Of a DNA stretch of 64,000 nt, positions 12,518-33,946 are shown piece by piece. A program made the position numbers and the translations under genes. The notes under the pieces were generated by a model. The model was not told the origin of the DNA. It did no database searches and saw nothing but the letters and a program-made list of their open reading frames with translations. The first letter of the stretch is position 1; each line of letters starts with the position of its first letter. The stretch covers positions 186,001 to 250,000 of IMG/VR virus record IMGVR_UViG_3300042562_001598. One strand, 5' to 3'.

Positions 12518-12538
12518 TTTTTTAATATATTTATCAAT

Positions 12539-12922: not shown

Positions 12923-12983
12923 AAAAAATATTCTAAAAAGTTTGTGGATATTAGAAAAAGAGTTATCTTTGTCAAAGAAAATA

Positions 12984-13115
12984 AGTCTTAGCCGAAAAGA
13001 CTGAGCACAAAACTAGAGTTTGTGTAGGAATACATCTAAAGATGGTGGCTAAGTGGGTCTCTTGGATACACCCGACCAAGCGTAAGGCGACAACACGTTA
13101 GGGAAAGCTGTCGTA
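12984..13115 (+). ncRNA. Unknown structured RNA with its own promoter and terminator
   Basis: TATCTTTG at 12964; several hairpins; terminator AACCCCCAA/TTGGGGGTTTT at ~13121-13146. Confidence 0.55.
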
Positions 13116-13220
13116 ATACTAACCCCCAACTATAATTGGGGGTTTTATAAAAAAAATTAAAAATACTTTACACTTTAGTGAATTAGTATATATTTATTAG
13201 AAATAACAATAAAACAACAA

Positions 13221-13295
13221 ATGAAAAATCTAAACATATCACTTACAATAGCGGCAACTGAGGGTAGAGATACAACTTGGATGTTGATGGTATGA
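13221..13295 (+). CDS. Putative leader peptide 2 (24 aa)
   Basis: MKNLNISLTIAATEGRDTTWMLMV followed by terminator 13318-13354, upstream of the second tRNA cluster. Confidence 0.5.
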   Translation: MKNLNISLTIAATEGRDTTWMLMV

Positions 13296-13415
13296 AATAT
13301 ATTTAACTAAAAATATTAAAAAATCCATCTTCAAAAAAAAGGTGGATTTTTTTTTATGTGTTGTTGTTATAATCAAATATTATCCTTATCTTTGTTAAAA
13401 GAAATTATAAAAAAT

Positions 13416-13592
13416 ATGAAAGATACAAAAACTAACCAGGAGGTTACATTAAACGAAGAATTGGTGATGGAGTATTCACCAATATTAGGAACAACATACA
13501 CATTAAAACCAGTTGAGTGGGATGAAGACCACGCGTTTAGTTTAGTTCTAAATGATATCCTTGATGATTTGGATATTGATGAGTTAAAATAG
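13416..13592 (+). CDS. Small hypothetical protein
   Basis: Start moved to MKDTK after TATCTTTG. Confidence 0.5.
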   Translation: MKDTKTNQEVTLNEELVMEYSPILGTTYTLKPVEWDEDHAFSLVLNDILDDLDIDELK

Positions 13593-13601
13593 TAATACAA
13601 T

Positions 13602-13673
13602 GGCCCGGTCGTCTAAAAGTTAGGACCTCACATTTTCATCGTGAAAACCGGGGAGCGTTACCCCGTCGGGCTA
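13602..13673 (+). tRNA. tRNA-Glu(UUC)
   Basis: GGCCCGG/TCGGGCT; loop TTTTCAT; T-loop AGCGTTA. Confidence 0.8.
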
Positions 13674-13696
13674 CGAAAGATATAAAATAAATTCAC

Positions 13697-13776
13697 GCGG
13701 TTGTGAAAGATATAGGTGAATGTCGGGTTCGATTCCCGGCAACCAGGACGGTTCGACTCCGCTGGTGCTGGCCGCA
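13697..13776 (+). ncRNA. Double-T-arm tRNA-like RNA
   Basis: Two tandem TTCGA(T/C)T hairpins closed by GCGGTT/GGCCGC. Confidence 0.55.
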
Positions 13777-13807
13777 ATATACTATTTCATTTTTTATATC
13801 TTTAATT

Positions 13808-13879
13808 GGGGCTATCGTATAAAAGCTATTACAATGGTTTTGCAAATCATAGAACACGGAGCGTTACCGTGTAGCTCCA
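13808..13879 (+). tRNA. tRNA-Ala(UGC)
   Basis: GGGGCTA/TAGCTCC with G3:U70; loop TTTGCAA; T-loop AGCGTTA. Confidence 0.88.
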
Positions 13880-13946
13880 CAAAAAAAACAAAAATAAGTT
13901 TGATTATTAAAATAATATAACTTAAATTTGTAGAGAATAAAAACAA

Positions 13947-14017
13947 AGTCTAGTAGTGAAAAAGAATCATCCAACACTGTCACTGTTGAGTAGCCGGAGC
14001 ATTACCGGTCTAGACTG
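13947..14017 (+). tRNA. tRNA-Asp(GUC)
   Basis: AGTCTAG/CTAGACT, G73; loop CTGTCAC; T-loop AGCATTA. Confidence 0.82.
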
Positions 14018-14034
14018 CAAAATAAATAATACAT

Positions 14035-14105
14035 CGCGGGAAGCTAAGTAGCAGTCGGGTCTCATAAGCCATGATGTGTAGTAGGAGCGTTACCTTCTCC
14101 CGCAA
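14035..14105 (+). tRNA. tRNA-fMet(CAU), divergent
   Basis: C1:A72 mismatch; loop CTCATAA; weak anticodon stem; T-loop AGCGTTA. Confidence 0.65.
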
Positions 14106-14127
14106 CTAATTTAATAAATAATTAACT

Positions 14128-14301
14128 ATGGCTACAGCACCGCAAAAATCAAGAAAACAAAGAGCTTTAAGTGTTCTTGAAACACAATTAAGTAATTCAG
14201 TTAAAACTGAAAAAGGAACAACAGATGTTAAAATTCCTCTAACTGAAGCAGATGTTAAGAGAATTAAAAAAGAAATTGAAATCTTAAAAACAAGAGTTTA
14301 A
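14128..14301 (+). CDS. Small basic protein (57 aa)
   Basis: MATAPQKSRKQRALSVLE...VKRIKKEIEILKTRV; phage-like codon usage. Confidence 0.6.
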   Translation: MATAPQKSRKQRALSVLETQLSNSVKTEKGTTDVKIPLTEADVKRIKKEIEILKTRV

Positions 14302-14310
14302 TTTAGTTCC

Positions 14311-14382
14311 GCGGGTGTCGTATAATGGTCATTACAATTGACTTCCAATCAATAGACGAGATTTCGATTATCTCCATCCGCT
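14311..14382 (+). tRNA. tRNA-Gly(UCC)
   Basis: GCGGGTG/CATCCGC, U73; loop CTTCCAA. Confidence 0.88.
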
Positions 14383-14570
14383 CTTTCTCAGAGAATTACG
14401 ACGAAAACTGGGTTTTAGCCCCTGTTATAACACCACCAAGATACTCTAGCAATTCCGGATTAGTTAGGTTGCGGTGATAAGGAAATAAGTCGGGTATAGC
14501 TAACCAAAAAGACGAAAACCTTGTAGTGGATTATGGTGACGCTCCATAGCAGTAAATCTCTTATTATAAT

Positions 14571-14640
14571 AATTGGGTAGCTCAGTGGATAGAGCAGTCA
14601 ATATATTGATGTGCCGGTGGTTTGATTCCACCCCCAATTA
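14571..14640 (+). ncRNA. tRNA-like RNA with collapsed anticodon loop
   Basis: AATTGGG/CCCAATT; canonical D-arm; GTCAA-TATA-TTGAT arm with a 4-nt loop. Confidence 0.65.
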
Positions 14641-14644
14641 TAAC

Positions 14645-14719
14645 ACCCCCATGGGCAAACTGGTAAAGTCGCTTCACTTAGGATGAAGAGTTCTGTGAGT
14701 TCAACTCTCACTGGGGGTA
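14645..14719 (+). tRNA. tRNA-Leu(UAG) with short variable arm
   Basis: ACCCCCA/TGGGGGT; loop CTTAGGA; TTCAACT. Confidence 0.8.
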
Positions 14720-14723
14720 CAAA

Positions 14724-14793
14724 TTAGAATTAGCTTATAGTAAAGCGGCAGGAGTTTAACTTACTGCATAACGGATTCCAACACCGGTTCTAA
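14724..14793 (+). ncRNA. Degenerate tRNA-like element
   Basis: TTAGAAT/GTTCTAA acceptor and D-arm; irregular anticodon and T arms. Confidence 0.4.
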
Positions 14794-15376
14794 TTTTTTA
14801 TAAAATAAAATAGGTTTATAAGTATAGATTTTATATATTTGTTAAAATAAACATAACCCAGTAGATAGGTCCGCCAAGAAAGTCTTTAAACAACGTGGGA
14901 ACTGCGGCTCTCCCAATGTGGCTGGAATGTTTTAATAAAAGGCTGAACATCGAACCTTTGTAATAGACTATAAAAGGTCTTTAAGACGTAGTATTGTAAT
15001 AAATATTATGCTTTACATAAAGATATCAACAGAGATGTTGAATGCGTTGTTCCCTTGAGAAAGGAAAATAGAGTGGCTACAAGGTTGTTGCAACAACTAG
15101 TAAAGACTAACGCAAATGAGCTCTCAGCAAGCAACCTGTTTGGGTTCATCCAGCAGCTGCGTGACCCTACTCTTATACAAGCTCCGTAACTGATAACTCG
15201 GCAAGCTATAAGAAAGGGTGCTAAATAAAAACTACTTGAGTAAGTGGGGGTGGTCAATCAACAACCCATTGAAGTTTCAGGTGAATATATAGACAGGATT
15301 GGTGAGTCTATATAAGTAAGTAACAAGTTAATGTGTTTTTAGAAAGATTGAATAGTTTTTAACATTGGCGAAAAAT

Positions 15377-15460
15377 AGTCAGGTGACGTAATGTAAACGT
15401 TATGGTGCAAGTCCATTTCAACTCAAGTGAGTAATATAGGTGCGAATCCTGTTCTGACTA
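15377..15460 (+). ncRNA. AGTCAGG-family tRNA-like RNA, copy 7
   Basis: Same acceptor; core contains a second T-loop-like hairpin ATGG-TGCAAGT-CCAT. Confidence 0.75.
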
Positions 15461-15676
15461 CAATGAGTAAGAGATACTCAGAAGTCTTTAATCCAAGACT
15501 TTTTAACAATGGATTGGGTAATGAATTGGACATCCTCAAAGCCAATTCCTTGGGTGAAAGACAGGTAGTAGCGTCTCCAAGTAAACTTGACTTTTTTGTT
15601 TGGGTAAGACCGTCTTCGTTTTTGAAAGGATAAAACGAGTAATATCTACACCGAAATATCTCATCGGTGGTTTTTT

Positions 15677-15748
15677 GGTCTCGTAGCTCAAAGGTGGAGC
15701 AGTTCGCTCATAACGAAAAGGATGGGATATCGTAATTCCCCGAGACCA
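15677..15748 (+). tRNA. tRNA(CAU): elongator Met or Ile2
   Basis: GGTCTCG/CGAGACC; loop CTCATAA; atypical T-loop ATCGTAA. Confidence 0.8.
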
Positions 15749-15872
15749 CAAATTATCCCCCCTTTGTGTTCTATCACATCGGCCAACCTCCAGGGAAACT
15801 TGGGGGTTTTTTTAAAAAATATTATGTGAAACTTAAATATAATTTATTTATATTTGTAAAAAGAAAATAAGT

Positions 15873-21334: not shown

Positions 21335-22210
21335 ATCGGGAATAACCGATATCGTTCTTTGAGAAAACAGATTATCCATTATAATACTTCGGTATTGTAA
21401 AAAACGATAATGGGCGGCTTATAGTCCTTATATAAATTGATGAAAATCAATATAAAGTGAATCTGTTGTGTTAACAGATTTGCGGTTTCAGAAATGGAAC
21501 TCAAGTAAGCAAGCAGGATACTATATAATCTTGATTACCGAGGCCAACGGTGTAGGGAAAGTGATTATATAACTGGGTGATGTGGGTCATCTGGTTGAGG
21601 GGGGAACTCTAATAGGAATAACCTGTAGGATTTGTGCAAAAAATATGATTATCCAATTATATTATTGCGACTTCCAAAATTAAAGGAAACTTAAAACCGA
21701 AAGGTATGACAACAAACAGGTGGTGCTGAAATTGTCCTTGATACTTATCTACCAAGGTAAATATCTCGAAGTAGTCTTGAAATTTGAGAGTAGGGATACT
21801 CTAAGATGAAGTTAAGTATTCTGATGTCCAAAAGATATCGGAGCTTGGGGTAAACCACTTCGTCTATTCATCCACAACACAATACCTTATACTTTATTTA
21901 AGTAAAACTAAAAAAATGTAAGCAAAAGTGTTTACCACTATGAAACGGAAGTTGCCCACATATTCACTGGCTGTCAGTGGAACGTAATAACCGCAAGTTT
22001 GACCGTATTTTTATGAAAAATCTCTAAGCCGTCGGAAGCTGAATCAGGACGCAATCTTGATGAGACAGGAGTAGTAAGAGAGTAGTTTCATAGTTAAGGG
22101 GTGATTGGTCTAACCAATCGGCAATGAGAAATACTAATCAAAAGTTAGTGGAAAAGTAGGGAAACCATAATCCTATGAAAGGTTCTTAAAATTAAAGTTT
22201 ATTCTCAGCT
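21335..22210 (+). ncRNA. Giant structured ncRNA (~870 nt), candidate GOLLD-class
   Basis: ORF-free; own TATCTTTG promoter and terminator (~22238-22274); many hairpins with UUCG/GNRA loops; family identity not verified. Confidence 0.7.
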
Positions 22211-22285
22211 TTTTTTATTTTTTATCAAAACATACAGAAAATCCTTTAACAAAATAATGTTAAAGGATTTTTTTGTTAATTGATA

Positions 22286-22788: not shown

Positions 22789-23241
22789 ATGAAAAAAGAA
22801 ATCAACATAGTCAATAAGAAAGCGAAACACGAATACGAGTTTTTACAGACTTACGTATGCGGCGTTAAGCTAATCGGTTGTGAAGTAAAATCAATACGCC
22901 TAGGTAAGGTTTCCATATCCGAGGGGTATTGTTACTTCAACAATAACGAATTATTCATTAAAGGAATGAACATATCTGATTATGGTTACGGCACAGTCCA
23001 TGATAACACCTCAGATAGAAAGTTATTATTAAAACGGAAAGAGTTAAACAAATTAGAAAAAGAACTCGTAAAAGGCCTTACAATCGTTCCTTACAGGGTC
23101 TTTACAAATGAGAGAGGATTGATTAAAATAGAGATATCCCTATCTCGTGGTAAAAAGAACTACGATAAAAGAAATGACCTAAAGTCCAGGGATATTGATA
23201 GAGATAGTAAAAGAGAAATTAGTGGTCGGTTCACAAAATAA
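22789..23241 (+). CDS. smpB: SsrA-binding protein
   Basis: NKKAKHEY, GVKLIGCEVKSIR, RKLLL, RGKKNYDKR. Confidence 0.95.
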   Translation: MKKEINIVNKKAKHEYEFLQTYVCGVKLIGCEVKSIRLGKVSISEGYCYFNNNELFIKGMNISDYGYGTVHDNTSDRKLLLKRKELNKLEKELVKGLTIVPYRVFTNERGLIKIEISLSRGKKNYDKRNDLKSRDIDRDSKREISGRFTK

Positions 23242-23676: not shown

Positions 23677-24063
23677 TGGTGGAGATGCCGGGATTTGAAC
23701 CCGGGTCTTGCCCATCCTAAAGATTAAGGACTACACGCTTAGGTCAACATTTTTCTAATGTTCCGAAAATAGTTAGTTCGTTCTTCACCATTGTAAACTA
23801 ACAACCAATGGATGACTCGATTTCGGGTTCAGTCATTTTTCCACCTTTGTAAGACCTTATGTTCCTGGGTTATATGGTTACCGACCCGTTGTTGTTCAAC
23901 TAATTAAGCTGTAACAACTTCTTCAGAGCGGATTAATCCTACTGCTGAAAGTTTTGCGATTGTTTCGCCGTTTGAATTTTGTGACCATAGATTTAAGTGA
24001 TAGGAAACTTCTCACTGCGTGCCCCCAATAAATAGCAATGCCAATCAATACCATTTCATCCCC
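23677..24063 (-). ncRNA. ssrA: tmRNA
   Basis: GGGGATG/CATCTCC-ACCA with G3:U70; T-arm GGTTCAAATCC; tag ORF GETIAKLSAVGLIRSEEVVTA* at 23969-23904. Confidence 0.92.
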
Positions 24064-24144: not shown

Positions 24145-25500
24145 ATGGCTGATATAGATAATAGTAAAAACAACGCATACGAAGGAACTCGTATTATTGT
24201 AAATACTGAAGACTTAATGTTTTTGGAGGTTTTAGCTCCGGATTCTTTAGGTTATTTTGGACTTGATTGGGTTAAGAACCGATATGATAGATTTAGAGAT
24301 GGTAATTTATATTTAATTGTTGATAAGAGAGAACTCCCTGTAAATGTTAAAGTATTATATACTGACACTGATGGTGAATTTTTCGGATATTATCAATCTG
24401 GGGATACTATAAAGTATTCTGAACTACTTTTAGAGTATCCTGAGTTAGTGGACCAAATAACAGCTTTAGAACCGGTGAGTGAAATATATGACGCATTACT
24501 TTCAATCTCTGAAGGACAGGAATTATCAAAATACAACCTTAGAAATATTGATGACTTAGTTAGTGATTTCAAATTTAACAAACGAAGTCCAAGGGCTAGT
24601 TCTGTTATGTTATCATTTGATGATGTTGATGATATTCTTGGGATATTTGATGTTAGTGAGGACGATAAGTGGTTTGTGGGAGCTGTAACATCTTATGATA
24701 GTTATGAATTTGAGTATTGGGATAATGTTCATGATGATTGGTTACAAGGGTATGGTTTAGACCATTTTAGTGGTGTCGAAAACGAAACTAGAATTGATAA
24801 TATTTTAAAAGTTATATTACCTGGTCATAGTATAAATACGAATGATGATGAGGAACGACAATTAATTTGCAATACTTTAGAGACTTTTTTCCCAAGTGAA
24901 ATTGAGGATGTTTTAGATACCTATATTCGTGAACAAAATTATTGTAAAACAAGAGGAACCTTAAAGGAAATAGAATCAGATGTTTCTAATTTATTTGAAC
25001 CATATAACATATTCAAAGTAGGTGAAGGGTATAATTATGTTACAAGTGTTAAAACTTTATTAAGTCTATATGAAAATGTGGGTTCTAAAAAATATACATT
25101 AAAAGAACTTTTAGCTGAAATTAATAAAGATACTGAAGTTGGTGGTTGGGCTGAATACATGTATGAAACAGAATGTGATGAGTTTGACCAAGTAACTATG
25201 GATAGAACTGTAAGTCAGGCTTTAGATTCTATGGAAGAAGGTTTAGAGGATTCTGATAAGTTTGAGGATATTGAGGAATTTAAAAAAATGGCGGATTTTA
25301 TTTTATCAAAATATGATTTAAATAGAAATTATGAAACACCTAAAGATAGTAATATCAGATTTACCATACATCAACTAGACCCCTCCGATAATTCTGTATT
25401 GGTTACGGTTAAAAACCTTGAGAAAAGAACTTCAGAAAAAAGAAGATTAGATTTGGAAGGGTTTAATAATTTATTAACTCAACAAGAATTATTTCAATAA
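24145..25500 (+). CDS. Acidic hypothetical protein
   Basis: 451-aa ORF. Confidence 0.7.
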   Translation: MADIDNSKNNAYEGTRIIVNTEDLMFLEVLAPDSLGYFGLDWVKNRYDRFRDGNLYLIVDKRELPVNVKVLYTDTDGEFFGYYQSGDTIKYSELLLEYPELVDQITALEPVSEIYDALLSISEGQELSKYNLRNIDDLVSDFKFNKRSPRASSVMLSFDDVDDILGIFDVSEDDKWFVGAVTSYDSYEFEYWDNVHDDWLQGYGLDHFSGVENETRIDNILKVILPGHSINTNDDEERQLICNTLETFFPSEIEDVLDTYIREQNYCKTRGTLKEIESDVSNLFEPYNIFKVGEGYNYVTSVKTLLSLYENVGSKKYTLKELLAEINKDTEVGGWAEYMYETECDEFDQVTMDRTVSQALDSMEEGLEDSDKFEDIEEFKKMADFILSKYDLNRNYETPKDSNIRFTIHQLDPSDNSVLVTVKNLEKRTSEKRRLDLEGFNNLLTQQELFQ

Positions 25501-25540: not shown

Positions 25541-26359
25541 ATGGAAAGAAATTATCAACTATTGAAAGATGTTTTATCGGTTCCGACTAAAACATATAAT
25601 GAAGGATTAATGGTGGAATTCATAACCAATTGGTTATCGGAGAATAACATCCCCTTCTATATTGACGAGTATCAAAATATTTACGCTACAAAACAAACTT
25701 TTGAGGTGGAATATTTCCCTTGTGTTATTGCACATACGGATACCGTTCATAACATTGACACTATCAATGTAAGAGAAGAAAATCTTAAAAACGCACAAGG
25801 TGAAATAAAACCTGCGTTAAAGGCTTATAATGATTTGGGTAATCCAACTGGTATTGGTGGTGATGATAAATGTGGCGTTTATGCTTGTCTTGAATTACTA
25901 AAAGAATTACCAAATCTAAAAGCTGGATTTTTCGTATCTGAAGAAACTGGATGTCACGGTTCTAAAAACGCGGACCCTGAATTTTTTAAGAATGTGGGGT
26001 ATGCTATTCAATTTGACGCTCCGGAGAACTGGATGGTTTCAGAATATTGTATGGGTGTTAAGTTATTTGATAGAGAGAGTGATTTCTTCAAGTCTTGTGA
26101 TTTTGTTATAAACGAAAACTTTAATGGTCGTCAATTATACCAAGCACATCCTTATACAGATGTTTATAAATTAAAACAGATTTTTAATTTTTCTTGTATT
26201 AATTTCTCAATCGGGTATTACGATTATCATACAAAATATGAATATGTAATTATTGAAGATGTTTATAGTGGTATTAAAACCGGGAAAGAAATGATTGAAA
26301 AACTAGGATATCAAAAATATACCTTAGAATACGAACAATCAACATATAACTTTTATTAA
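25541..26359 (+). CDS. M20/M28-family zinc peptidase
   Basis: AHTDTV, GGDDKCG, SEETG, terminal YH. Confidence 0.85.
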   Translation: MERNYQLLKDVLSVPTKTYNEGLMVEFITNWLSENNIPFYIDEYQNIYATKQTFEVEYFPCVIAHTDTVHNIDTINVREENLKNAQGEIKPALKAYNDLGNPTGIGGDDKCGVYACLELLKELPNLKAGFFVSEETGCHGSKNADPEFFKNVGYAIQFDAPENWMVSEYCMGVKLFDRESDFFKSCDFVINENFNGRQLYQAHPYTDVYKLKQIFNFSCINFSIGYYDYHTKYEYVIIEDVYSGIKTGKEMIEKLGYQKYTLEYEQSTYNFY

Positions 26360-26411: not shown

Positions 26412-27113
26412 ATGAAAAATTTATTTAATGACATTTCTCAAGAAGAGAAAAATAGAATACTTGAGATGCACTCAGGTAAAAAGAATGTAATTTCTGAACA
26501 AAATAGTCAACAAGTTTATAAAGAAATTGCGGATTATTTATATAATTCTATGAAAGGGTTAAGTTCCTCTGAGGATTCAGAAAATGTTGAAACAATTATA
26601 CTTAATAGAATAAAAAATAAAAATGATTGGGAAGGAGTTAAAAAGGCTTTTGGGGTAAAAGACGGTGAAAATTTGGAACAGTGGTTAAAAGGTGAACTTA
26701 GACTTGATTATAATGAAATAATGGGAATGATAAATCGAAATGACGGTAATTTTAAGAAAGAAGATTCAATGTATAATCCGGGGTCTAAAATTAGTTTAAT
26801 TACTAATAGACAGTTTCTTATGTCAAGAGCATATCAATATGCAAGTATTATGGGTGACAAAAAAGAATTAGAATTGGATATTAATAACGCAATAATTATT
26901 CGTAGAGATAAAGATGGGATAGTTATTAAAACTGATTATGTTGATTATTACCCAATTCCTGAATATACAAGAGGAAAATCTACACCAAAACAAGAAAGAT
27001 TAACAAAACCTTGTATAAAAATCCCTTTTAAAGATGTAATTGAATGGAGAGATGGTACTTTACAAATTAGATGGTTTTCTGATTTTGTTAAAAGTAGGGT
27101 AGTACCTTGTTAA
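26412..27113 (+). CDS. Leader-family cargo protein
   Basis: First 30 aa identical to 22307; unrelated thereafter. Confidence 0.75.
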   Translation: MKNLFNDISQEEKNRILEMHSGKKNVISEQNSQQVYKEIADYLYNSMKGLSSSEDSENVETIILNRIKNKNDWEGVKKAFGVKDGENLEQWLKGELRLDYNEIMGMINRNDGNFKKEDSMYNPGSKISLITNRQFLMSRAYQYASIMGDKKELELDINNAIIIRRDKDGIVIKTDYVDYYPIPEYTRGKSTPKQERLTKPCIKIPFKDVIEWRDGTLQIRWFSDFVKSRVVPC

Positions 27114-27142
27114 ATTCTAAATTAATATAAAAAAAAAGAGGA

Positions 27143-27655
27143 CTATTTGTCCTCTTTCCTTTTTCTTGTTTTCTTAGATGTCTCTTGGAGACTTAACTTC
27201 TTTTTCTACTGAAACAAGGGTATATAACACACCTTCCACCATATTTCCTTTGATAATCTCTTCGGATACAAAATCCTCAATCTTATCTTGGATTGTTCTT
27301 TTGATTGGTATAGCTTCGTAAGTCTCGTCAAATCCAACATCGGAAATCAAATGTAAAATAGTTTCATCAAATGTGATGTTATAGTTCAAACCAACTAATC
27401 TTTTTGATAACTTATCTAATTCCAATGTTACAATTTTTTTAACATCTTCCTTCACCAACGAATTAAAGATAACAACCTCATCAATTCTATTTAAGAATTC
27501 CGGAGTAAAGAATTTTTTAAGTTCTTTTTTAAGAATTTCTCGTTTGTATTCTTCTTCAGCATAAGAGTTATTACCGGTTTTAAATCCCACACCTGAACCA
27601 AAGTCTTGTAATTTTTTAACCCCCACATTTGATGTCATAATGATGACACAATTTT
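27143..27655 (-). pseudogene. 3' fragment of a second, divergent clpC allele
   Basis: NCVIIMTSN...PEFLNRIDE; GAR motif changed to EAI; frameshift separates the basic tail LQETSKKTRKRKEDK*. Confidence 0.8.
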
Positions 27656-27850
27656 TAATTTTTCTTGTATTAATTTCTCAATTGGGTATTATGATTATCA
27701 CACAAAATATGAATATGTAATTATTGAGGATGTTTATAGTGGTATTAAAACCGGGAAAGAAATGATTGAAAAACTAGGATATCAAAAATATACCTTGGAA
27801 TATGAACAACCAATTTATAACCTTTATTAAGAGACTTCGGTCTCTTTTTT
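27651..27850 (+). repeat. Duplicate of the peptidase 3' end plus terminator (26180-26379)
   Basis: ~200-bp near-identical direct repeat, including AAGAGACTTCGGTCTCTT. Confidence 0.9.
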
Positions 27851-27881
27851 ATTTATTGGTATTTATTAATAAAATGTTATT

Positions 27882-28274
27882 ATGAAAAAATTAATAATTA
27901 CTGAAGAAGAAAAAAATAGAATACTTAATCTTCATTTAAACGAACAAAGTAAAGAAAATTCCGCAGTTAAATTTATAAAAAATTTATTGGTAACAAATCC
28001 AAATTTATTTAATGGTAAAAAACCTTTAAGTTTATTAGAAAAACCATTGAATGATTTTAACTCAAAAAACCCTTCCGATAGATTAGATATACCATCATTA
28101 GTAAAACAGTTGTCGGTTAATAATTCACCTTTTAAAATGACCACATTCAACATTCAAACCTATGAACCAAAACGCATTACTAGGTTAGATTATGACTTAA
28201 ACAACATTGGTTTTACCTTAACAAAAAATGAAATTGATAACTCAATACAGGGTGGTGTTAAATTAAAATTTTAA
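27882..28274 (+). CDS. Leader-family cargo protein
   Basis: MKKLIITEEEKNRILNLHLNEQ. Confidence 0.75.
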   Translation: MKKLIITEEEKNRILNLHLNEQSKENSAVKFIKNLLVTNPNLFNGKKPLSLLEKPLNDFNSKNPSDRLDIPSLVKQLSVNNSPFKMTTFNIQTYEPKRITRLDYDLNNIGFTLTKNEIDNSIQGGVKLKF

Positions 28275-28325
28275 GAGACTTCTGTCTTTTTTTTTATTTT
28301 AAGTATTTATTACTAAAACACTATT

Positions 28326-29144
28326 ATGAAAAACTTATTTATACTAACCGAAGAAGAAAAAAATAGAATTTTAAATCTTCATGAAAGTGCCACAAAACGA
28401 CATTATTTAGTTGAACAAGAAATAAAACAAGGACCTGAAGGTGACCCATATCAATATAAAAAAATTGGTGACGAATATTTTTACGCTAAGAAAAATGACG
28501 ACAATTGGACTAAAGTTAATAACCCTAAAGGTATTACAGATATCAAAAATACTATTTTTAATTCATCAATAAATAAATTAACAACTCAAAAACCTGAAGC
28601 TTATTTATTATTTGATGGTACTAATTTAAATTGGATTGAGAATGGTAAAGTTATTAAACGATGGTCAGCAATTTCAGGAAGAACTAAATTTAATACTTTT
28701 GGTGATAAAAATTTGGAGAAATTAGTTAAAAAATATGGGGCTAATAGGATGGAATTTATGAAAATTAAAGACCAAGGTCCTATACCTGTTGGTGAATATT
28801 CTATAGGTCAAGTACAAAAACGAACAAATGGTGACGCTCAAAGATTTATACAAGGTAAAACGGATAAAGAGTTACAACGTATTATGTTACAAAATGTTAA
28901 ACACGATTGGAATTTAGGAACAGAAACTGATATGGTTGCTTGGGGTAATTACAGATTACCAATAACTAAAGTTGGTGAAACTGAAACTTTTGGTAGAGGT
29001 AGTTTTTACATTCATGGTGGTGGTATTCCAGGTTCTATTGGTTGTATTGATTTATTAACTCAAATGGATGATTTCGCAAACTATTTCACAAATTGGAAGA
29101 ATAAAACAAAAAAAAATAAATTAAAATTAGTTGTTAAGTATTAA
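28326..29144 (+). CDS. Leader-family protein with Tlde1/DUF2778 L,D-transpeptidase-like domain
   Basis: Leader ...EEKNRILNLHESATKRHYLVEQ; GPIPVGEY; RGSFYIHGGG..GSIGCI. Confidence 0.75.
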   Translation: MKNLFILTEEEKNRILNLHESATKRHYLVEQEIKQGPEGDPYQYKKIGDEYFYAKKNDDNWTKVNNPKGITDIKNTIFNSSINKLTTQKPEAYLLFDGTNLNWIENGKVIKRWSAISGRTKFNTFGDKNLEKLVKKYGANRMEFMKIKDQGPIPVGEYSIGQVQKRTNGDAQRFIQGKTDKELQRIMLQNVKHDWNLGTETDMVAWGNYRLPITKVGETETFGRGSFYIHGGGIPGSIGCIDLLTQMDDFANYFTNWKNKTKKNKLKLVVKY

Positions 29145-29551
29145 TTTTACTAATAAATAAATAAATAAATAAATAAAAATGAAAAAAGTAGTTAAATTAA
29201 CTGAAAGAGAATTAAATAATCTTATTAGGAGAATGATTAACGAAGATATGGAATCTTCTTTAGAATCAAAAGGTGGTAAATGGTTAAGTGTTAAAAACAA
29301 AATACCCGCAAACCCACCTAAAATGTCTCTTGGTGCTTTAAAAGAAAGATTGGGTAATGACGGATATTCTAATGATAATAGTGATGAACCTTTAGCAAAC
29401 ATTCAAGTTTTTGTTCATGGAGCAAAAAACCCTGGTGAGAACATTCCGATGAGATTATTATTCCGTAACCCAACAGACCCAACAGACAGAAAATGGTATG
29501 AACTAGTTGCTTAATAAAAAAAAAATAAATTAAAATTAGTTGTTAAGTATT
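29108..29551 (+). repeat. 35-bp direct repeats (29108-29142, 29517-29551) flanking one gene
   Basis: A9-TAAATTAAAATTAGTTGTTAAGTATT occurs at both positions. Confidence 0.85.
29179..29514 (+). CDS. Cargo protein with MKKVVKLTE leader
   Basis: MKKVVKLTERELNNLIRRMINE. Confidence 0.7.
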   Translation: MKKVVKLTERELNNLIRRMINEDMESSLESKGGKWLSVKNKIPANPPKMSLGALKERLGNDGYSNDNSDEPLANIQVFVHGAKNPGENIPMRLLFRNPTDPTDRKWYELVA

Positions 29552-29583
29552 GATATTTTTTTATATTTTTGTAAAAAAAAGAT

Positions 29584-30090
29584 ATGAAACTAATAACATT
29601 ATTACTCGTAATTACAACATCACTTTATGGTCAGTCAAAAATAGAGATTGCTAAAGAATTACAAAAACAATATAACCCCCCTAATAAGAATTATGTTGTT
29701 TTTATTGATTACTCAAAACCAATTTCAGAAAAAAGATTATACGTGATTGATATGAAAACATCAGAAACAATTTTAACCACTAAAGTTGCTCACGGAATAA
29801 ATAGTGGTAAAGAATACGCTACTGAATTTAGTAACACTGATAAAAGTTTAAAAAGTAGTTTAGGTGTTTATGTTACTCAAGAAACATATTATGGTTACTT
29901 TGGTTACTCTTTAAGAATTAATGGTTTAGATAAAACCAATTCTAATGCGAGACAAAGAAATATTATATTTCATTCTAACACAAAAATGAGTAAAAAATGG
30001 TCTTGGGGTTGTTTCTCAACAGATGAAAAAACTAACAAAAAACTAATTAATATAATAAAAAATGGGTGTTTAGTTTATGTTTATAAATAA
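29584..30090 (+). CDS. Secreted murein L,D-transpeptidase (YkuD_2-like)
   Basis: Signal peptide; IDYSKP, VAHG, SSLG, IIFH...SWGCF. Confidence 0.85.
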   Translation: MKLITLLLVITTSLYGQSKIEIAKELQKQYNPPNKNYVVFIDYSKPISEKRLYVIDMKTSETILTTKVAHGINSGKEYATEFSNTDKSLKSSLGVYVTQETYYGYFGYSLRINGLDKTNSNARQRNIIFHSNTKMSKKWSWGCFSTDEKTNKKLINIIKNGCLVYVYK

Positions 30091-30101: not shown

Positions 30102-32153
30102 TTATTCGTCCCCTTTTTTCTTTCTACCTCTTTTCAAAGGTTCTTTATTTTTAGTTATAATAACTTCTTTATCTACAACATCAACCACACTTGAGTCCCC
30201 CTCGTTAATTTCACCTTTCAAAATCTCTTCAGAGATGAAGTCTTCAATTTTATCTTGAATAGCTCTTTTAATAGGTCTTGCTCCATAGTTTTCATCATAA
30301 CCAACATCAGATATCAATTCAGTTACTTTATCGGTATAACTAAAGTTATATTTGATTTTAGCAAGACGACCCATTAGTTTATCTAATTCTAAAGTAACAA
30401 TCTTTTTAACATTCTCTTTATCTAAAGATTTAAACATAATAACATCATCAATTCTGTTTAAGAATTCAGGCGCGAAGAATTTTTTAAGTTCAGCTTTAAG
30501 GATATCGTTTTTAAGTTCTTGTTCAATATATTCGTTACCACCATTTTTAAATCCAACACCAGTTCCGAAGTCTTGTAATTTTTTAACACCTAAATTAGAT
30601 GTCATAATGATAAGACAGTTTTTAAAGTTAATTTTTTTACCTAAAGAGTCAGTTAAGTGACCTTCATCTAACATTTGTAAAAGTGTTGAGAAGATATTTT
30701 TATCCGCTTTTTCAATCTCATCAAATAAGATAACAGAGTAAGGTTTATTTTTAACTTCATTAGTTAAGAATCCACCTTCTTCGTGGGCAACATAACCTGG
30801 AGGAGAACCTATAAGTCTTGAGATTGTATGTTTTTCTTGATATTCTGACATATCAATTCTAATCATATTTTCTTCACTACCAAAAATTTCTTTTGCTAAT
30901 TGTTTTGCTAAATAAGTTTTTCCTACTCCGGTAGAACCTAAAAAGATGAATGAACCAATTGGACGATTTGGGTCTTTAATACCTAATCTATTTCTTCTGA
31001 TAGCTTTTGCGATTTTAACCACGGCTTCAGGTTGACCAACAACTTTATCAGCTAAAGCTTGTTCTAAATTAACTAATGCTTTAGTATCGTCAATTGATAA
31101 TTTTGATACAGGTATTTTAGTCATATTAGATACAACTTCATATACTAGTTCTTCAGGAATTTCTCTTTTATGAGCTTGTAATTCCGCTTCAAATTTTATT
31201 TTTTCATCCTCTAATTTTGATAGAATTCGTTTTTCTTTATCTCTAAGATTAGCCGCTTCTTCATAGTTTTGTTTTTTAACTACCTCAATTTTTTCCAATT
31301 TAATATCTGACGCTTGTTGTTTTAATTTTTCAATTATTTCAGGCATCTTAATATCAACTTGACTTCTCGCACCAACTTCGTCTAAAATATCAAAAGCTTT
31401 ATCCGGGAATTCTCTGTCGGTAATGTATCTATCCGCTAAATCAACACAAATTTCTAAAATAGAATCAGTGTAATTTACTTTATGATATGATTCATATTTT
31501 TCTTTAGCGTTTTTCAAGATGATTAATGTTTCTTCTTTTGTTGCAGAATCAACAATAACCTTTTGAAATCTTCTTTCTAATGCTCCGTCTTTTTCAAAGT
31601 TTTTTCTATATTCATCTAAAGTTGTTGCTCCAACACATTGGATTTCACCTCTTGCTAAAGCTGGCTTAAAGATGTTTGACGCATCCATTGACCCGGATGA
31701 ATTTCCCGCACCAACAATGGTGTGAATCTCATCAATGAATACAATTATGTTTGGAGAGTTTTGTAACTCCTCAATAATAACTTTCATTCTTTCTTCAAAT
31801 TGTCCACGGTATTTTGTTCCTGCAACAATGGATGTCATATCTAAAGATACGATTCTTTTATCCATTAAGTTTCTTGGACAATCCCCATTATATATTTTAA
31901 TTGCAAGACCTTCAACGATTGCAGTTTTACCACAACCAGGTTCACCTAATATAATAGGATTATTTTTCTTTCTACGAGAAAGAATTTGAGCAATCCTAGT
32001 GATTTCTCTTTCACGACCAACTACAGGGTCTAATTTACCTTCTTCAGCTAACTTTATTAAGTCTCTACTAAAGTTATCTAATACAGGTGTTGTTGATTCT
32101 GAGATGGAATTTGATTTTTTTCCTTTTTCGTCATTATCTGAAAATTCTATCAT
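30102..32153 (-). CDS. clpC: ClpC-like AAA+ unfoldase lacking the N-terminal Clp-repeat domain
   Basis: Walker A motifs GEPGCGKT and GSTGVGKT; FIDEIH; UVR M-domain QNYEEAANLRD; GARP. Confidence 0.92.
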   Translation of the reverse strand: MIEFSDNDEKGKKSNSISESTTPVLDNFSRDLIKLAEEGKLDPVVGREREITRIAQILSRRKKNNPIILGEPGCGKTAIVEGLAIKIYNGDCPRNLMDKRIVSLDMTSIVAGTKYRGQFEERMKVIIEELQNSPNIIVFIDEIHTIVGAGNSSGSMDASNIFKPALARGEIQCVGATTLDEYRKNFEKDGALERRFQKVIVDSATKEETLIILKNAKEKYESYHKVNYTDSILEICVDLADRYITDREFPDKAFDILDEVGARSQVDIKMPEIIEKLKQQASDIKLEKIEVVKKQNYEEAANLRDKEKRILSKLEDEKIKFEAELQAHKREIPEELVYEVVSNMTKIPVSKLSIDDTKALVNLEQALADKVVGQPEAVVKIAKAIRRNRLGIKDPNRPIGSFIFLGSTGVGKTYLAKQLAKEIFGSEENMIRIDMSEYQEKHTISRLIGSPPGYVAHEEGGFLTNEVKNKPYSVILFDEIEKADKNIFSTLLQMLDEGHLTDSLGKKINFKNCLIIMTSNLGVKKLQDFGTGVGFKNGGNEYIEQELKNDILKAELKKFFAPEFLNRIDDVIMFKSLDKENVKKIVTLELDKLMGRLAKIKYNFSYTDKVTELISDVGYDENYGARPIKRAIQDKIEDFISEEILKGEINEGDSSVVDVVDKEVIITKNKEPLKRGRKKKGDE

Positions 32154-32353
32154 ATTATTATTATTATTTTGTTTTGTTAATGATATCAATAATTATAACA
32201 AAAATTATTCTATGAATCAATATTGACAATTTGTCAGTATATTTTTTTATAAAATGTCAAATTGTCATATAAATAAGTCATTTTACTATAAATTTGACTT
32301 TGGTATAAAATTAGTTATAATTATTTCAAATAAAAAATTAAAACAAAAAAATT

Positions 32354-32821
32354 ATGTTTAGAAACACAAAAAACCCGTTCGTATTATTAAATGATTTTAC
32401 TACACCTTTTGGTTCTTTTGACCCATTCACGGTATTACTAGGAGATGTTAAGACTGAAAAAGGTCAAGACGAGAATGGTCAATGGACTTCTCAGACTTAC
32501 ACATCTGAAAATGGTGTTGTTACAGTAAAAAACTTCACTAGAACTTCTAAAAGTCCTAAAAGTAAAACAACTACTAATACAACAACAACTAACACAACAA
32601 CTAACACTACTGAGTTAACAACTTTACAAAATGAGTTAACAACAGCTATTGAGACTCAAAACTTTGAACGTGCAGTTGAATTAAGAGACCAAATTAAAAA
32701 ATTGGAATCTAATCAAGAAAAAATTGAAACTCTAACTTTAGAATTAGAAACTTCAATTAAAGAACAAAACTTTGAGAAATCAATTAAGTTGAGAGACCAA
32801 ATTAATAAGTTGACTAAGTAA
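32354..32821 (+). CDS. Double UVR-motif protein, candidate ClpC adaptor
   Basis: AIETQNFERAVELRDQI and SIKEQNFEKSIKLRDQI. Confidence 0.75.
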   Translation: MFRNTKNPFVLLNDFTTPFGSFDPFTVLLGDVKTEKGQDENGQWTSQTYTSENGVVTVKNFTRTSKSPKSKTTTNTTTTNTTTNTTELTTLQNELTTAIETQNFERAVELRDQIKKLESNQEKIETLTLELETSIKEQNFEKSIKLRDQINKLTK

Positions 32822-32901
32822 TTTACTAAACCCCACCTTTGAGTGGGGTTTTTTATTTATTAAAATTACTGAATAGTTATTATTATAAAAAAAATTATAT
32901 T

Positions 32902-33144
32902 ATGGGAATTAAAAAAGAAATTATTGAAGGTACTAAAATTATTAATGAAATTGAATCAAGTAATTTAGTTAAAACTATCTATGATGTTGAGAGTCAAAAA
33001 TTAATAGCGGAATTCAAAAATGGGTTTAAATATGAGTATGATGAAGTGCCTCACAAAACATATACTCAATTTAGGATGTCAGAATCTCAAGGAAAATTCT
33101 TCAACACTAACATCTCAAAGACTTTTAAGTATAAAAAATTATAA
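32902..33144 (+). CDS. KTSC domain protein
   Basis: SSNL...YD...L..EFKNG..YEY..VP...SQGKFFN. Confidence 0.85.
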   Translation: MGIKKEIIEGTKIINEIESSNLVKTIYDVESQKLIAEFKNGFKYEYDEVPHKTYTQFRMSESQGKFFNTNISKTFKYKKL

Positions 33145-33175: not shown

Positions 33176-33946
33176 ATGGATAATAATATTAAAAATATTT
33201 TACAAAGTTTTCACTTACAAGACACCTTAAACCCTAAAATATGGGTTATGTCTGAAGATGATGAAATTGGTAATATGAATCCTAAAGTTAGGACTCGTTT
33301 ACTTGACATTGCCTACGACTTTATTGATTTCTTAGGTGTGGATGTTATTGTGTCGGATGTTGTTATGACAGGTTCATTATCAAATTATAATTGGTCAAAA
33401 TACTCTGATGTTGATTTACACATCATTGCTGATTTTAATCAATTCAAGGAATCTGAATTACCTTTATATAAAGACTTATTTATATTAAAAAAAACAATAT
33501 ATAATGATAACCATGATATTACTATTTATGGTTATGATGTTGAACTATATGTTCAAGATGAAAATGAAGCTCACTTTAGTAGTGGTGAATACTCTATTCT
33601 ATTTGATGAATGGAAATCAAAACCTAAAAAAGAGAATGTTGATATTGACACCGAATTAATTAAAACAAAAGCTAAAAAATGGATGGATTCTATTGATGCT
33701 ATAATAGAACAATCAAAAGATGAATCTTTAGAAGAGTCTAAATTATTAATAGGTAAGTATAAGGATAAGTTAAAGAAATATAGAACAAGTGGGTTAGAAA
33801 AAGACGGAGAATATTCTAATGAAAATTTAGTATTTAAGGTTTTAAGGAGAAATGGGTATGTTCAAAAGTTATTTGATTTCTTAAATAAAAACACAGATAA
33901 AATCCTCTCGCTTGACGAAAAAATAAAAAATACATCAGAAAAGTAA
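33176..33946 (+). CDS. Pol-beta-superfamily nucleotidyltransferase
   Basis: TGSLSNYNWSKYSDVDLH; third acid in VELYV. Confidence 0.75.
   Translation: MDNNIKNILQSFHLQDTLNPKIWVMSEDDEIGNMNPKVRTRLLDIAYDFIDFLGVDVIVSDVVMTGSLSNYNWSKYSDVDLHIIADFNQFKESELPLYKDLFILKKTIYNDNHDITIYGYDVELYVQDENEAHFSSGEYSILFDEWKSKPKKENVDIDTELIKTKAKKWMDSIDAIIEQSKDESLEESKLLIGKYKDKLKKYRTSGLEKDGEYSNENLVFKVLRRNGYVQKLFDFLNKNTDKILSLDEKIKNTSEK

What the first reader, a model, noticed from the sequence alone, without database searches (positions are those of the whole stretch)
30102..32821. N-domain-less ClpC paired head-to-head with a double-UVR protein
Seen: ClpC starts almost directly at the first AAA module (TPVLDNFSRDL), with no Clp-repeat N-domain but an intact UVR M-domain. 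The divergent neighbour has two UVR motifs. Established: ClpC N-domains bind substrates and adaptors, and UVR coiled coils dimerise and control ClpC activation. Inference: a phage unfoldase blind to host adaptors and gated by its own partner. With SmpB, tmRNA and the peptidase it forms a private ribosome-rescue and proteolysis circuit; no clpP is in this window.
Basis: partly seen in the sequence, partly recalled or inferred. Interest (0 to 1): 0.6.

Follow-up and report, generated by a model that had tools for sequence, protein, structure and literature searches.

The report
Phage ClpC without its N-domain
A lake jumbo phage encodes a ClpC protein-unfolding motor that lacks the adaptor-binding N-domain; it sits in a conserved block with a phage tmRNA (degradation tag) and a peptidase, and in about half of its relatives beside a small two-UVR-motif protein that may regulate it.

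Summary
Window 30102-32153(-) encodes a ClpC with both AAA+ rings, a short UVR-type M-domain and the VGF ClpP-docking loop, but no Clp_N domain. None exists anywhere in the 282-kb phage genome. The divergent neighbour 32354-32821(+) carries two strong UVR motifs.

- All 80 closest IMG/VR relatives also lack the N-domain. All 77 sampled cellular homologues have room for one.
- The two-UVR protein occupies the divergent slot in 37 of 79 relatives. Elsewhere the slot holds a small heat-shock protein, DnaK, a 113-aa protein or nothing.
- Two complete related genomes have no UVR partner at all. Five UVR proteins sit directly upstream of a phage dnaK instead. The partner is therefore accessory, not an obligate gate.
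- The stronger linkage is with a phage tmRNA. It lies 1.9-5.1 kb downstream on the same strand in 51 of 52 loci with enough flank, and encodes a conserved 21-23-residue non-canonical tag. An MH-clan peptidase is also linked (93 loci).
- The phage does encode ClpP, about 48 kb away. Two complete relatives lack it.

Published work on engineered S. aureus ΔN-ClpC fits a tmRNA-tag protease regulated through its M-domain. Binding of the partner to ClpC remains untested.

The parts
30102..32153 (-). ΔN-ClpC, 683 aa from the ATG (the open frame runs up to a TTG at 32189): D1 and D2 AAA+ modules, short M-domain, D2-small domain, no Clp_N domain
31224..31319 (-). UVR motif of the ClpC M-domain (...QNYEEAANLRD...), with Tyr at the position of S. 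aureus F436
   Evidence: Tyr or Phe in 81 of 81 phage ClpCs
30549..30557 (-). VGF tripeptide of the ClpP-docking loop in D2 (residues 545-547 of the 695-aa frame)
   Evidence: F541, G542, G544, G546 and F547 are invariant in 38 phage ClpCs
32154..32353 (.). Divergent intergenic region. Promoter-like sites face both ways: 32294-32321(+) matches 11 of 12, and 32220-32192(-) matches 10 of 12 with a TG. TGACA/TTGTCA repeats lie at 32223-32267.
32354..32821 (+). Tandem-UVR protein, 155 aa. Disordered Phe/Asp-rich N-terminus, a three-strand beta element (about residues 32-64), a Thr/Asn-rich linker, then three helices that carry UVR1 (32612-32710) and UVR2 (32717-32812).
32828..32861 (+). Terminator-like hairpin with a T-run directly after the UVR gene, which would make it a single-gene transcription unit
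32902..33144 (+). KTSC-domain protein (80 aa), a conserved member of the divergent gene row
   Evidence: 96 loci
33176..33946 (+). Nucleotidyltransferase-like protein (phrog_36119), a conserved member of the row
   Evidence: 94 loci
25541..26359 (+). MH-clan (M20/M42/M18-like) peptidase. In relatives it lies convergent and directly next to clpC.
   Evidence: 93 loci; phrog_4191, E 1e-33
24145..25500 (+). Conserved 451-aa protein of unknown function between the tmRNA and the peptidase
   Evidence: (73 loci)
23677..24063 (-). Phage tmRNA. The tag frame at 23904-23969 encodes GETIAKLSAVGLIRSEEVVTA followed by a stop.
   Evidence: (83.4 bits against a 47-bit threshold)
22789..23241 (+). SmpB
27174..27638 (-). 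Free-standing 3' fragment of a ClpC gene (ClpP loop plus D2-small domain). It is 92% identical to the ClpC of another phage lineage (L015) and 64% identical to the resident ClpC. The sensor-2 motif GAR reads EAI.

Best explanation
This is a phage-lineage ClpC that has permanently lost the N-terminal Clp-repeat domain. It is the constant core of a proteostasis block carried by a large group of freshwater jumbo phages: tmRNA, a 451-aa protein, an MH-clan peptidase and ΔN-ClpC. On the divergent side there is a variable slot holding a tandem-UVR protein, a small heat-shock protein, DnaK or nothing, followed by KTSC and a nucleotidyltransferase-like gene.

Shown: both AAA+ rings, the pore-loop motifs, the M-domain and the ClpP-docking VGF loop are intact and under strong conservation.

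Inferred: the motor docks on ClpP, either the phage's own as in this genome or the host's where the phage has none. Lacking the N-domain, it cannot be recruited by N-domain adaptors or by phospho-arginine marks. It therefore takes substrates through degrons read at the pore, first of all the conserved 21-23-residue tag written by the neighbouring phage tmRNA. The peptidase would then trim the released peptides.

Inferred from experiments on S. aureus ΔN-ClpC: the retained M-domain tip (Tyr) lets hexamers pair head-to-head into an inactive form, so something must release them.

Hypothesis: the tandem-UVR protein has two motifs that match the M-domain motif, including the aromatic residue. It docks on M-domains and tunes this switch, or acts as an adaptor. 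It is an accessory factor, not an obligate partner.
For: Domains and the missing N-domain. ΔN is a clade trait: 80 of 80 closest viral loci carry 664-741-aa ClpCs with no N-domain, and 120 of 120 best protein clusters are 675-720 aa without PF02861. A 634-kb huge phage has one as well. All 77 sampled cellular homologues have at least 161 residues of open frame upstream of D1. The phage ClpCs form one clade with SH-aLRT 100. The VGF loop is invariant. The phage ClpP keeps its Ser/His/Asp triad. tmRNA synteny: 51 of 52 loci, 68 of 68 on the same strand, median 2.6 kb away, and 5 of 5 genomes by Rfam. The tag is conserved in 68 of 69 tmRNAs. The peptidase is found in 93 loci. The UVR partner lies divergent in 37 of 79 relatives, spread over all subclades including the deepest branch. 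UVR2 aligns to the ClpC M-domain with E 1.3e-4. The partner's best PDB match is the S. aureus ClpC M-domain, E 8e-4. Literature: S. aureus ΔN-ClpC binds ClpP without an adaptor, but forms M-domain-mediated head-to-head ring dimers and rods and is proteolytically inactive. ΔN-ClpC-F436A degrades GFP-SsrA as well as MecA-activated wild type, because the SsrA degron is read at the pore (PMC12583610). UVR-domain proteins are enriched on trapped chloroplast CLPC1, and the adaptor CLPF has a UVR domain (PMC8889267).
Against: There is no direct evidence that the UVR protein touches ClpC, and no experiment on any of these proteins. The partner is missing in 42 of 79 relatives and from two complete genomes. 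Five partners are operonic with dnaK rather than next to clpC. The M-domain tip does not covary with partner presence. ClpP is absent from 2 of 4 complete relatives and SmpB from 2 of 4, so the circuit is not self-contained in every phage. Recognition of the unusual tag by ClpC is assumed, not shown, and the tag ends in V-x-A rather than the canonical LAA. Expression could not be examined.
Confidence: 0.5

Rival explanations
1. ΔN-ClpC works mainly as a ClpP-independent unfoldase or disaggregase. It would act with the small heat-shock protein or DnaK encoded in the same slot, for folding or assembly of the many large virion proteins of a jumbo phage. The tandem-UVR protein would be a co-chaperone linking Hsp70 to the ClpC M-domain, as ClpB's longer M-domain does by itself.
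For: The slot next to clpC holds Hsp20 in 12-13 loci and Hsp70 in 2. Five UVR proteins sit 1-2 bp upstream of a phage dnaK on the same strand. Two of four complete relatives lack a phage ClpP. ClpL, a related ATPase whose rings pair through M-domains, is a stand-alone disaggregase (PMC11006417, listed; cited).
Against: The VGF ClpP-docking loop is invariant in all 38 aligned phage ClpCs, including those from genomes without a phage ClpP. That makes sense only if ClpP is bound. The near-universal neighbours are a degradation-tag RNA and a peptidase. This phage itself has no Hsp20 or Hsp70 of those types.
Confidence: 0.25
2. The tandem-UVR protein is aimed at a host protein rather than at the phage ClpC. 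Candidates are the host ClpC M-domain, or the UvrB-UvrC contact that runs through UVR domains. It would disable host proteolysis control or excision repair, and its position next to clpC would be incidental.
For: The UVR motif is the UvrB/UvrC interaction module, and Pfam sees nothing else in the protein. Phages are known to target host ClpC, as SPO1 Gp53 does (PMC6873191). The gene is its own transcription unit.
Against: It keeps the same divergent position beside clpC in 20 of the 26 UVR-protein loci, and otherwise sits beside dnaK, never in a repair context. The family's nearest ESM Atlas clusters are 100% viral. Its motif matches the phage ClpC M-domain.
Confidence: 0.12
3. The N-domain-less ClpC is a truncated or decaying gene, or an assembly artefact, with no function.
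For: A true ClpC fragment does exist nearby at 27174-27638.
Against: It has an intact 683-aa frame and 76% mean column identity over 38 homologues with all catalytic motifs invariant. The same architecture appears in at least 80 independent contigs and in 21 lake or freshwater metagenome studies.
Confidence: 0.01

Closest known systems
Bacterial ClpC (S. aureus, B. subtilis ClpC; M. tuberculosis ClpC1)
   Same: Colinear from the N-domain/D1 linker to the C-terminus (E 6e-218). Same short UVR-type M-domain with an aromatic tip, and the same VGF ClpP loop.
   Different: It lacks the whole Clp_N N-domain, which binds MecA, phospho-arginine and cyclic peptides and stabilises the resting state. It is encoded by a virus. 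It forms a separate clade, 43-51% identical to the sampled cellular proteins.
Engineered S. aureus ΔN-ClpC and ΔN-ClpC-F436A (Jenne et al. 2025, PMC12583610)
   Same: Same domain composition as the phage protein. The laboratory construct shows what such a protein does: it binds ClpP without an adaptor, forms M-domain-dependent head-to-head ring dimers, and degrades the SsrA degron efficiently once M-domain contacts are broken.
   Different: The phage version is natural and conserved. It has Tyr rather than Phe at the tip. It is linked to its own tmRNA and, in half of the lineages, to a UVR protein. Its behaviour is untested.
McsA (protein-arginine kinase activator), the name JGI gives some family members
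   Same: A small protein with a C-terminal UVR-like motif, encoded beside clpC in Firmicutes operons. There is a weak match to McsA 8wtb_B (E 0.9). The JGI names appear.
   Different: It has no zinc-finger CXXC motifs (no cysteine at all) and two UVR motifs instead of one. The genome has no McsB. There is no N-domain on ClpC to receive phospho-arginine.
Chloroplast CLPF and the UVR-domain CLPC1 interactors (UVR2-4, EXE1/2)
   Same: UVR-domain proteins that associate physically with a ClpC-type chaperone (PMC8889267).
   Different: They have different accessory domains (YccV, DUF151). CLPF works with ClpS1. No sequence relationship exists beyond the UVR motif.
SPO1 Gp53, a phage adaptor-like modulator of host ClpC
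   Same: A phage protein that acts on ClpC regulation (PMC6873191).
   Different: Gp53 binds mainly the host N-domain and hijacks host ClpC. Here the phage brings its own N-domain-less ClpC.
Phage-encoded Clp components and tmRNA/SmpB reported in jumbo or huge phages
   Same: ClpP, ClpS, ClpA and ClpX genes, and tmRNA/SmpB, have been noted in large phages (PMC7824862; PMC7162821; PMC4131195).
   Different: In the papers found, none describes an N-domain-less ClpC, its fixed synteny with tmRNA, the long conserved tag or the tandem-UVR neighbour.

Membership tests
ClpC (class I Clp/Hsp100 ATPase partnering ClpP) | Two AAA+ modules with Walker A/B motifs and pore loops | tested here: met
   Pfam AAA, AAA_lid_9, AAA_2 and ClpB_D2-small. 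GEPGCGKT/FIDE and GSTGVGKT/LFDE are invariant. Full-length alignment to 6em8.
ClpC (class I Clp/Hsp100 ATPase partnering ClpP) | Short M-domain (single coiled coil with a UVR motif) inserted in the D1 small subdomain | tested here: met
   Gapless alignment to the S. aureus M-domain. UVR scores 24.5 bits. It has the length of ClpC, not of ClpB.
ClpC (class I Clp/Hsp100 ATPase partnering ClpP) | ClpP-docking (I/L/V)-G-(F/L) loop in D2 | tested here: met
   GTGVGF at residues 542-547, invariant in 38 sequences.
ClpC (class I Clp/Hsp100 ATPase partnering ClpP) | N-terminal Clp_N repeat domain | tested here: not met
   No PF02861 in the protein or in the whole genome. The alignment starts at S. aureus residue 142.
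ClpC (class I Clp/Hsp100 ATPase partnering ClpP) | Physical and functional coupling to ClpP | not testable with these tools
   Only the loop motif and the presence of a phage ClpP with an intact triad can be shown.
ClpB/Hsp104 disaggregase | Long two-motif M-domain and no ClpP loop | tested here: not met
   The M-domain lacks the ~55-65-residue extension seen in the sampled ClpB rows. The VGF loop is present.
McsA | N-terminal zinc-finger CXXC motifs, plus a McsB kinase partner | tested here: not met
   The 155-aa protein has no cysteine. No PF00217 in the genome. Only the UVR motif is shared.
MecA adaptor | MecA domain (PF05389) | tested here: not met
   No hit in the neighbour or in the genome.
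UvrB/UvrC excision-repair proteins | Helicase or nuclease domains in addition to the UVR motif | tested here: not met
   Pfam finds only UVR, twice, in 155 residues.
tmRNA (RF00023) | tRNA-like domain plus an mRNA-like tag frame ending in a stop | tested here: met
   83.4 bits against a gathering score of 47, full length 1-374. A tag frame is found by ARAGORN only at a lowered threshold. The same frame is conserved in 68 of 69 relatives.

The most novel reading that the evidence does not exclude
These jumbo phages run a self-contained tag-and-destroy pathway that is orthogonal to host control. The phage tmRNA writes a long, virus-specific degron. Only the phage's N-domain-less ClpC reads it, at the pore. 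The tandem-UVR protein is a trans-acting M-domain mimic that opens the otherwise auto-inhibited head-to-head ClpC ring dimers, and its N-terminal beta element may read the conserved inner motif of the tag, as SspB does for SsrA. Where the protein sits beside dnaK, it may couple Hsp70 to ClpC.
Probability: 0.15. Interest if true: 0.8.

Novelty: new variant of a known kind. Interest (0 to 1): 0.62.

Why it matters
ClpC is a drug target whose N-domain is thought to be central both to keeping it silent and to switching it on. A large natural family that has discarded that domain, yet kept the M-domain switch and the ClpP loop, is a ready-made test of the 2025 model built on engineered ΔN-ClpC.

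The fixed linkage to a phage tmRNA with a conserved long tag suggests what phage tmRNAs are for. They may mark products of stalled ribosomes for the phage's own protease, so that ribosomes and amino acids are recycled during infection.

The tandem-UVR protein would be a new, very small class of ClpC regulator acting only through the M-domain. The three components (tag, motor, regulator) are small enough to reconstitute in vitro.

Tried and rejected
- Complex prediction of ClpC residues 30-360 with the UVR protein gave 'no answer' (score 0.10 against a mark of 0.32). It is not evidence either way.
- Idea: the N-terminal half of the UVR protein derives from the small heat-shock proteins that share its slot. 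Profile-profile comparison gave probability 1.4%, so this was rejected.
- Foldseek of the AlphaFold model (mean pLDDT 66.6) against the PDB gave nothing at E<=0.001.
- Idea: ClpCs without the partner have lost the M-domain tip aromatic. Tyr or Phe is present in 81 of 81, so this was rejected.
- Megablast against GenBank phages found no match. tblastn found only relatives under 60% identity.
It served as a control for N-domain presence, but not to name the nearest cellular relative or the host.
- Reading the ClpC fragment as a duplicate of the resident gene was rejected. It is 92% identical to another lineage's ClpC, while the flanking backbone genes are only 72-80% identical to that group. It is therefore an imported piece.
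- Expression: three lake metatranscriptomes hold 7-9% of the sampled words. Those places were not sent to any search afterwards; the UVR protein was then given as window:32360-32818 or as alignment A1.
- A small UVR protein next to cellular clpC or clpB was found in 0 of 80 sampled loci. That sample did not include mcsA-bearing Firmicutes.
Full report
WHAT IS THERE

The window is bases 186001-250000 of a 282,192-bp IMG/VR virus record judged 96% complete. It has about 30% G+C and carries a tRNA array, a GOLLD RNA and a tmRNA.

The ORF at 30102-32189(-) is a ClpC. Pfam finds AAA, AAA_lid_9, a UVR motif, AAA_2 and ClpB_D2-small, but no Clp_N. Against solved structures, residues 17-675 align colinearly with S. 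aureus ClpC residues 142-800 (E 6e-218). The phage protein therefore begins in what is the N-domain/D1 linker of cellular ClpC. All relatives start at the ATG at residue 13. A promoter-like site (32220-32192, minus strand) lies upstream of that ATG and overlaps the TTG. The gene is therefore 30102-32153, 683 aa.

A six-frame Clp_N search of the whole genome finds nothing, so the domain is not encoded separately. The M-domain has ClpC length, not ClpB length. It has Tyr where S. aureus has F436 and keeps the ...EEAANLRD... motif. The D2 loop reads GTGVGF, the ClpP-docking tripeptide.

The divergent neighbour 32354-32821(+) has two UVR motifs (E 1.9e-18; 43.9 and 30.2 bits). It has its own promoter-like site and a strong terminator-like hairpin.

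One addition: the phage does encode a ClpP, about 48 kb away and outside the window. Its Ser/His/Asp triad is aligned to S. pneumoniae ClpP. No other AAA_2-type Clp ATPase is present except a ClpC fragment. The genome has no McsB and no MecA.

THE N-DOMAIN LOSS IS A TRAIT OF A LARGE PHAGE CLADE

- At least 598 stretches in IMG/VR encode relatives.
- In the best 80 loci (69-80% identity) every ClpC is 664-741 aa and aligns from its first residues to the query's residue 8-30. The longest is the split gene of L088. None has an N-domain.
- The 120 best protein clusters in the 5.8-billion-protein collection are all 675-720 aa, with no PF02861 among their precomputed domains.
- A 634-kb huge phage in GenBank (LR745206.1, 58% identical) also has a 701-aa N-domain-less ClpC.
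- As a control, all 77 cellular homologues sampled whose frame is not cut by the contig end have at least 161 residues of open frame upstream of the D1 start.
- On a tree, the 81 phage proteins form one clade (SH-aLRT 100), apart from six cellular ClpC/ClpB rows.
- Mean column identity over 38 phage ClpCs is 76%. The Walker motifs, the M-domain motif and the VGF loop are invariant.

This is a functional, conserved variant, not a truncation.

THE PARTNER

The tandem-UVR family (alignment A1, 35 sequences) has four parts:
- a Phe/Asp-rich N-terminus, modelled as disordered;
- a conserved W...S-x-D-G element, modelled as three beta strands at pLDDT about 60-68;
- a variable linker, Thr/Asn-rich in this phage;
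- two highly conserved UVR motifs on three helices at pLDDT 80-88.

Both motifs carry the aromatic residue and the LRD/IRD signature of the ClpC M-domain motif. UVR2 aligns to ClpC 303-322 at E 1.3e-4. The best PDB match of the whole protein is the S. aureus ClpC M-domain (E 8e-4). The family has no PHROG. Its nearest ESM Atlas clusters are 100% viral. JGI's automatic names ('McsA', 'UvrB') rest on the motif alone.

Distribution of the slot immediately divergent from clpC, among the 79 ClpC relatives where it can be read:

| Slot content | Loci |
|---|---|
| Tandem-UVR protein | 37 |
| Hsp20 small heat-shock protein | 12-13 |
| 113-aa protein ('p113') | 8 |
| Hsp70 (DnaK) | 2 |
| Nothing before the conserved KTSC gene | 15 |
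| Other | the rest |

The UVR state is spread over all subclades, including the deepest branch, and needs at least 9-15 changes on the tree. That pattern suggests an old association with repeated loss or replacement.

Seen from the other side, 20 of the 26 UVR-protein loci have clpC in the same divergent arrangement. One further locus is cut at the contig end. The remaining five have the UVR gene 1-2 bp upstream of a phage dnaK on the same strand. One of those five lies on a long, about 65%-complete record that still has ΔN-ClpC 49 kb away, with p113 in the slot.

Two complete relatives with terminal repeats (G001, G002) have no UVR protein at all. The M-domain tip aromatic is present in 81 of 81 ClpCs whatever the slot holds. 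The partner therefore co-occurs far more than chance would allow and always with chaperone genes, but ΔN-ClpC clearly works without it.

THE STRONGER LINKAGE: tmRNA AND A PEPTIDASE

Rfam finds a full-length tmRNA within 2-4 kb of clpC in 5 of 5 further long related genomes (4 at least 99% complete, one about 65%). A profile built from the tmRNAs of these loci finds one 1.9-5.1 kb (median 2.6 kb) downstream of clpC in 51 of the 52 loci with at least 4.5 kb of flank. It is on the clpC strand in 68 of 68 cases.

The two genes in between are conserved: a 451-aa unknown protein (73 loci) and a 272-aa MH-clan peptidase (93 loci; phrog_4191, E 1e-33). In this window the distance is 6 kb. A block of about 3.7 kb (26412-30090), without counterparts in relatives, is inserted between the peptidase and clpC.

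The tmRNA is missed by ARAGORN at default settings. At a lowered threshold it yields a tag frame, and 68 of 69 relatives share it. The tag is 21-23 residues with the pattern G-[ND]-x-x-x-K-[LM]-x-x-x-G-L-[ILVT]-[RK]-..-E-..-V-x-A. Here it reads GETIAKLSAVGLIRSEEVVTA. A tag this long and this conserved, including an inner motif, is not a canonical SsrA tag and is evidently under selection.

SmpB is present here and in 2 of 4 complete relatives. ClpP is present here and in 2 of 4. The constant set is therefore tmRNA, peptidase and ΔN-ClpC. ClpP, SmpB, the UVR protein, sHSP and DnaK are mixed and matched.

HOW IT MOST LIKELY WORKS

Established by experiment on S. aureus ClpC (Jenne et al. 2025, PMC12583610):
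- Deleting the N-domain destabilises the resting state and lets ClpC bind ClpP without an adaptor.
- The hexamers then pair head-to-head through their M-domains, which requires F436. They form rods with ClpP and are proteolytically inactive.
- If the M-domain contact is also broken, ΔN-ClpC degrades GFP-SsrA as well as MecA-activated wild type, because the SsrA degron is read at the pore and not by the N-domain.

The phage protein has exactly this composition: no N-domain, an aromatic M-domain tip and the VGF loop.

My reading, with its basis marked:
1. Inference from the missing domain: it is invisible to N-domain adaptors and to phospho-arginine marking.
2. Inference from the invariant loop, including in genomes without a phage ClpP: it docks on the phage's or the host's ClpP.
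3. Inference from near-universal synteny plus the published pore recognition of SsrA: its preferred substrates carry the phage tmRNA tag.
4. Inference from synteny only: the neighbouring peptidase finishes the job.
5. Hypothesis: the tandem-UVR protein binds M-domains by UVR-UVR pairing and modulates the ring-dimer switch, or serves as an adaptor. Two precedents exist. UVR-domain proteins are among the most enriched interactors of trapped chloroplast CLPC1, and the adaptor CLPF carries a UVR domain (PMC8889267).

Step 5 has no direct support here. I put it at roughly one in three and the whole picture at about one in two.

RIVALS

(a) A ClpP-independent chaperone or disaggregase role with sHSP and DnaK, with the UVR protein bridging Hsp70 to ClpC. 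The slot contents and the dnaK-linked copies speak for it. The invariant ClpP loop and the tmRNA/peptidase neighbours speak against it as the main role.

(b) The UVR protein targets host UvrB/UvrC or host ClpC. This is possible, but its context is always chaperone genes.

(c) A pseudogene or artefact. The conservation data exclude this.

COMPARISON WITH WHAT IS KNOWN

The protein belongs to the ClpC lineage by every feature except the N-domain, which was tested and not met. It should therefore be called an N-domain-less ClpC variant rather than a canonical ClpC.

The neighbour is not McsA: it has no cysteine or zinc fingers, and the genome has no McsB. It is not MecA, not a Uvr repair protein and not CLPF.

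Large phages are known to carry ClpP, ClpS, ClpA or ClpX (PMC7824862) and tmRNA/SmpB (PMC7162821; PMC4131195). SPO1 Gp53 manipulates host ClpC through its N-domain (PMC6873191). In six full-text searches I found no description of a natural N-domain-less ClpC, of its synteny with tmRNA, of the long tag or of the tandem-UVR protein. Absence from that library is not proof of novelty.

LIMITS

- No expression data. Those places were left out of every later search.
- The complex prediction gave no verdict.
- Only the best 80 of at least 598 viral loci were examined.
- The host is unknown. The stretch occurs in 21 lake or freshwater metagenome studies, three of which may be the source of this DNA.

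Noticed in passing
window 27174-27638 (-): A free-standing 154-aa ClpC C-terminal fragment (ClpP loop plus D2-small domain). It is 92% identical to the ClpC of another phage lineage (L015) but only 64% identical to the resident ClpC, and the sensor-2 motif GAR is changed to EAI. Flanking ORFs share 97%-identical N-terminal ~30-residue stretches with L015 ORFs. It looks like a piece imported by recombination. Whether it is a relic or a decoy for ClpP is unknown.
   Followed up: partly
window 26412-30090: A block of about 3.7 kb inserted between the peptidase and clpC, with almost no counterpart in about 100 related loci. It holds two L,D-transpeptidase-like genes (Tlde1/YkuD at 28326-29144, YkuD_2 at 29584-30090) and several small ORFs.
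   Followed up: partly
window 22307, 26412, 27882, 28326, 29179 (ORF starts); L001 26, 408, 854: Many unrelated ORFs begin with a shared ~20-30-residue leader (MKNLF..EEEKNRIL.., MKKVVKLTE.., MKIIITENQ..). The ORFs at 22307 and 26412 share their first 30 residues exactly. This may be a common targeting, packaging or recombination module.
   Followed up: no
window 21804-22211 (+): A full-length GOLLD RNA (273 bits against a 150-bit threshold) about 0.6 kb upstream of smpB and 1.5 kb from the tmRNA.
   Followed up: no
window 23677-24063 (-): ARAGORN at default settings misses this tmRNA and most of its relatives. Rfam and a lowered ARAGORN threshold find them. Phage surveys that rely on default ARAGORN would undercount such tmRNAs.
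   Followed up: yes
window 8183-15749: A tRNA array: 13 genes by ARAGORN and a few more by Rfam. It includes two tRNA-Phe and two tRNA-Pro, and one gene with an undetermined anticodon at 14570-14641.
   Followed up: no
window 32223-32267: The clpC/UVR intergenic region holds a near-palindrome TTGACAATTTGTCA and further TGTCA/TTGTCA repeats. This could be a shared operator for the two divergent promoters.
   Followed up: no
L088:4100-7827: In one relative, clpC is split at the D1 Walker A region. A 97-aa N-terminal piece is followed by a 401-aa ORF with no Pfam family, then a 741-aa piece with 126 extra N-terminal residues. This could be an intron or intein-like insertion, or a mobile element.
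   Followed up: no
L010:5594-5938 and 51 other loci; L197:5644-5985: A conserved ~113-aa protein ('p113', motif ..FQREGWT..PPYYP..) with no Pfam or PHROG family. It is a frequent member of the row divergent from clpC, often right after the UVR or sHSP gene. It is absent from this phage.
   Followed up: partly
L196:5884-7989 (LR745206.1, 634-kb huge phage): A distant huge phage also has an N-domain-less ClpC (701 aa, 58% identical), with the M-domain motif and the VGF loop but no UVR neighbour. The variant therefore extends beyond this phage group.
   Followed up: partly
L197:3677-5416: In the G006 relative, the nucleotidyltransferase-like gene of the row is fused to a C-terminal region resembling M23 peptidases. 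This was judged by eye from the translation and not scanned.
   Followed up: no
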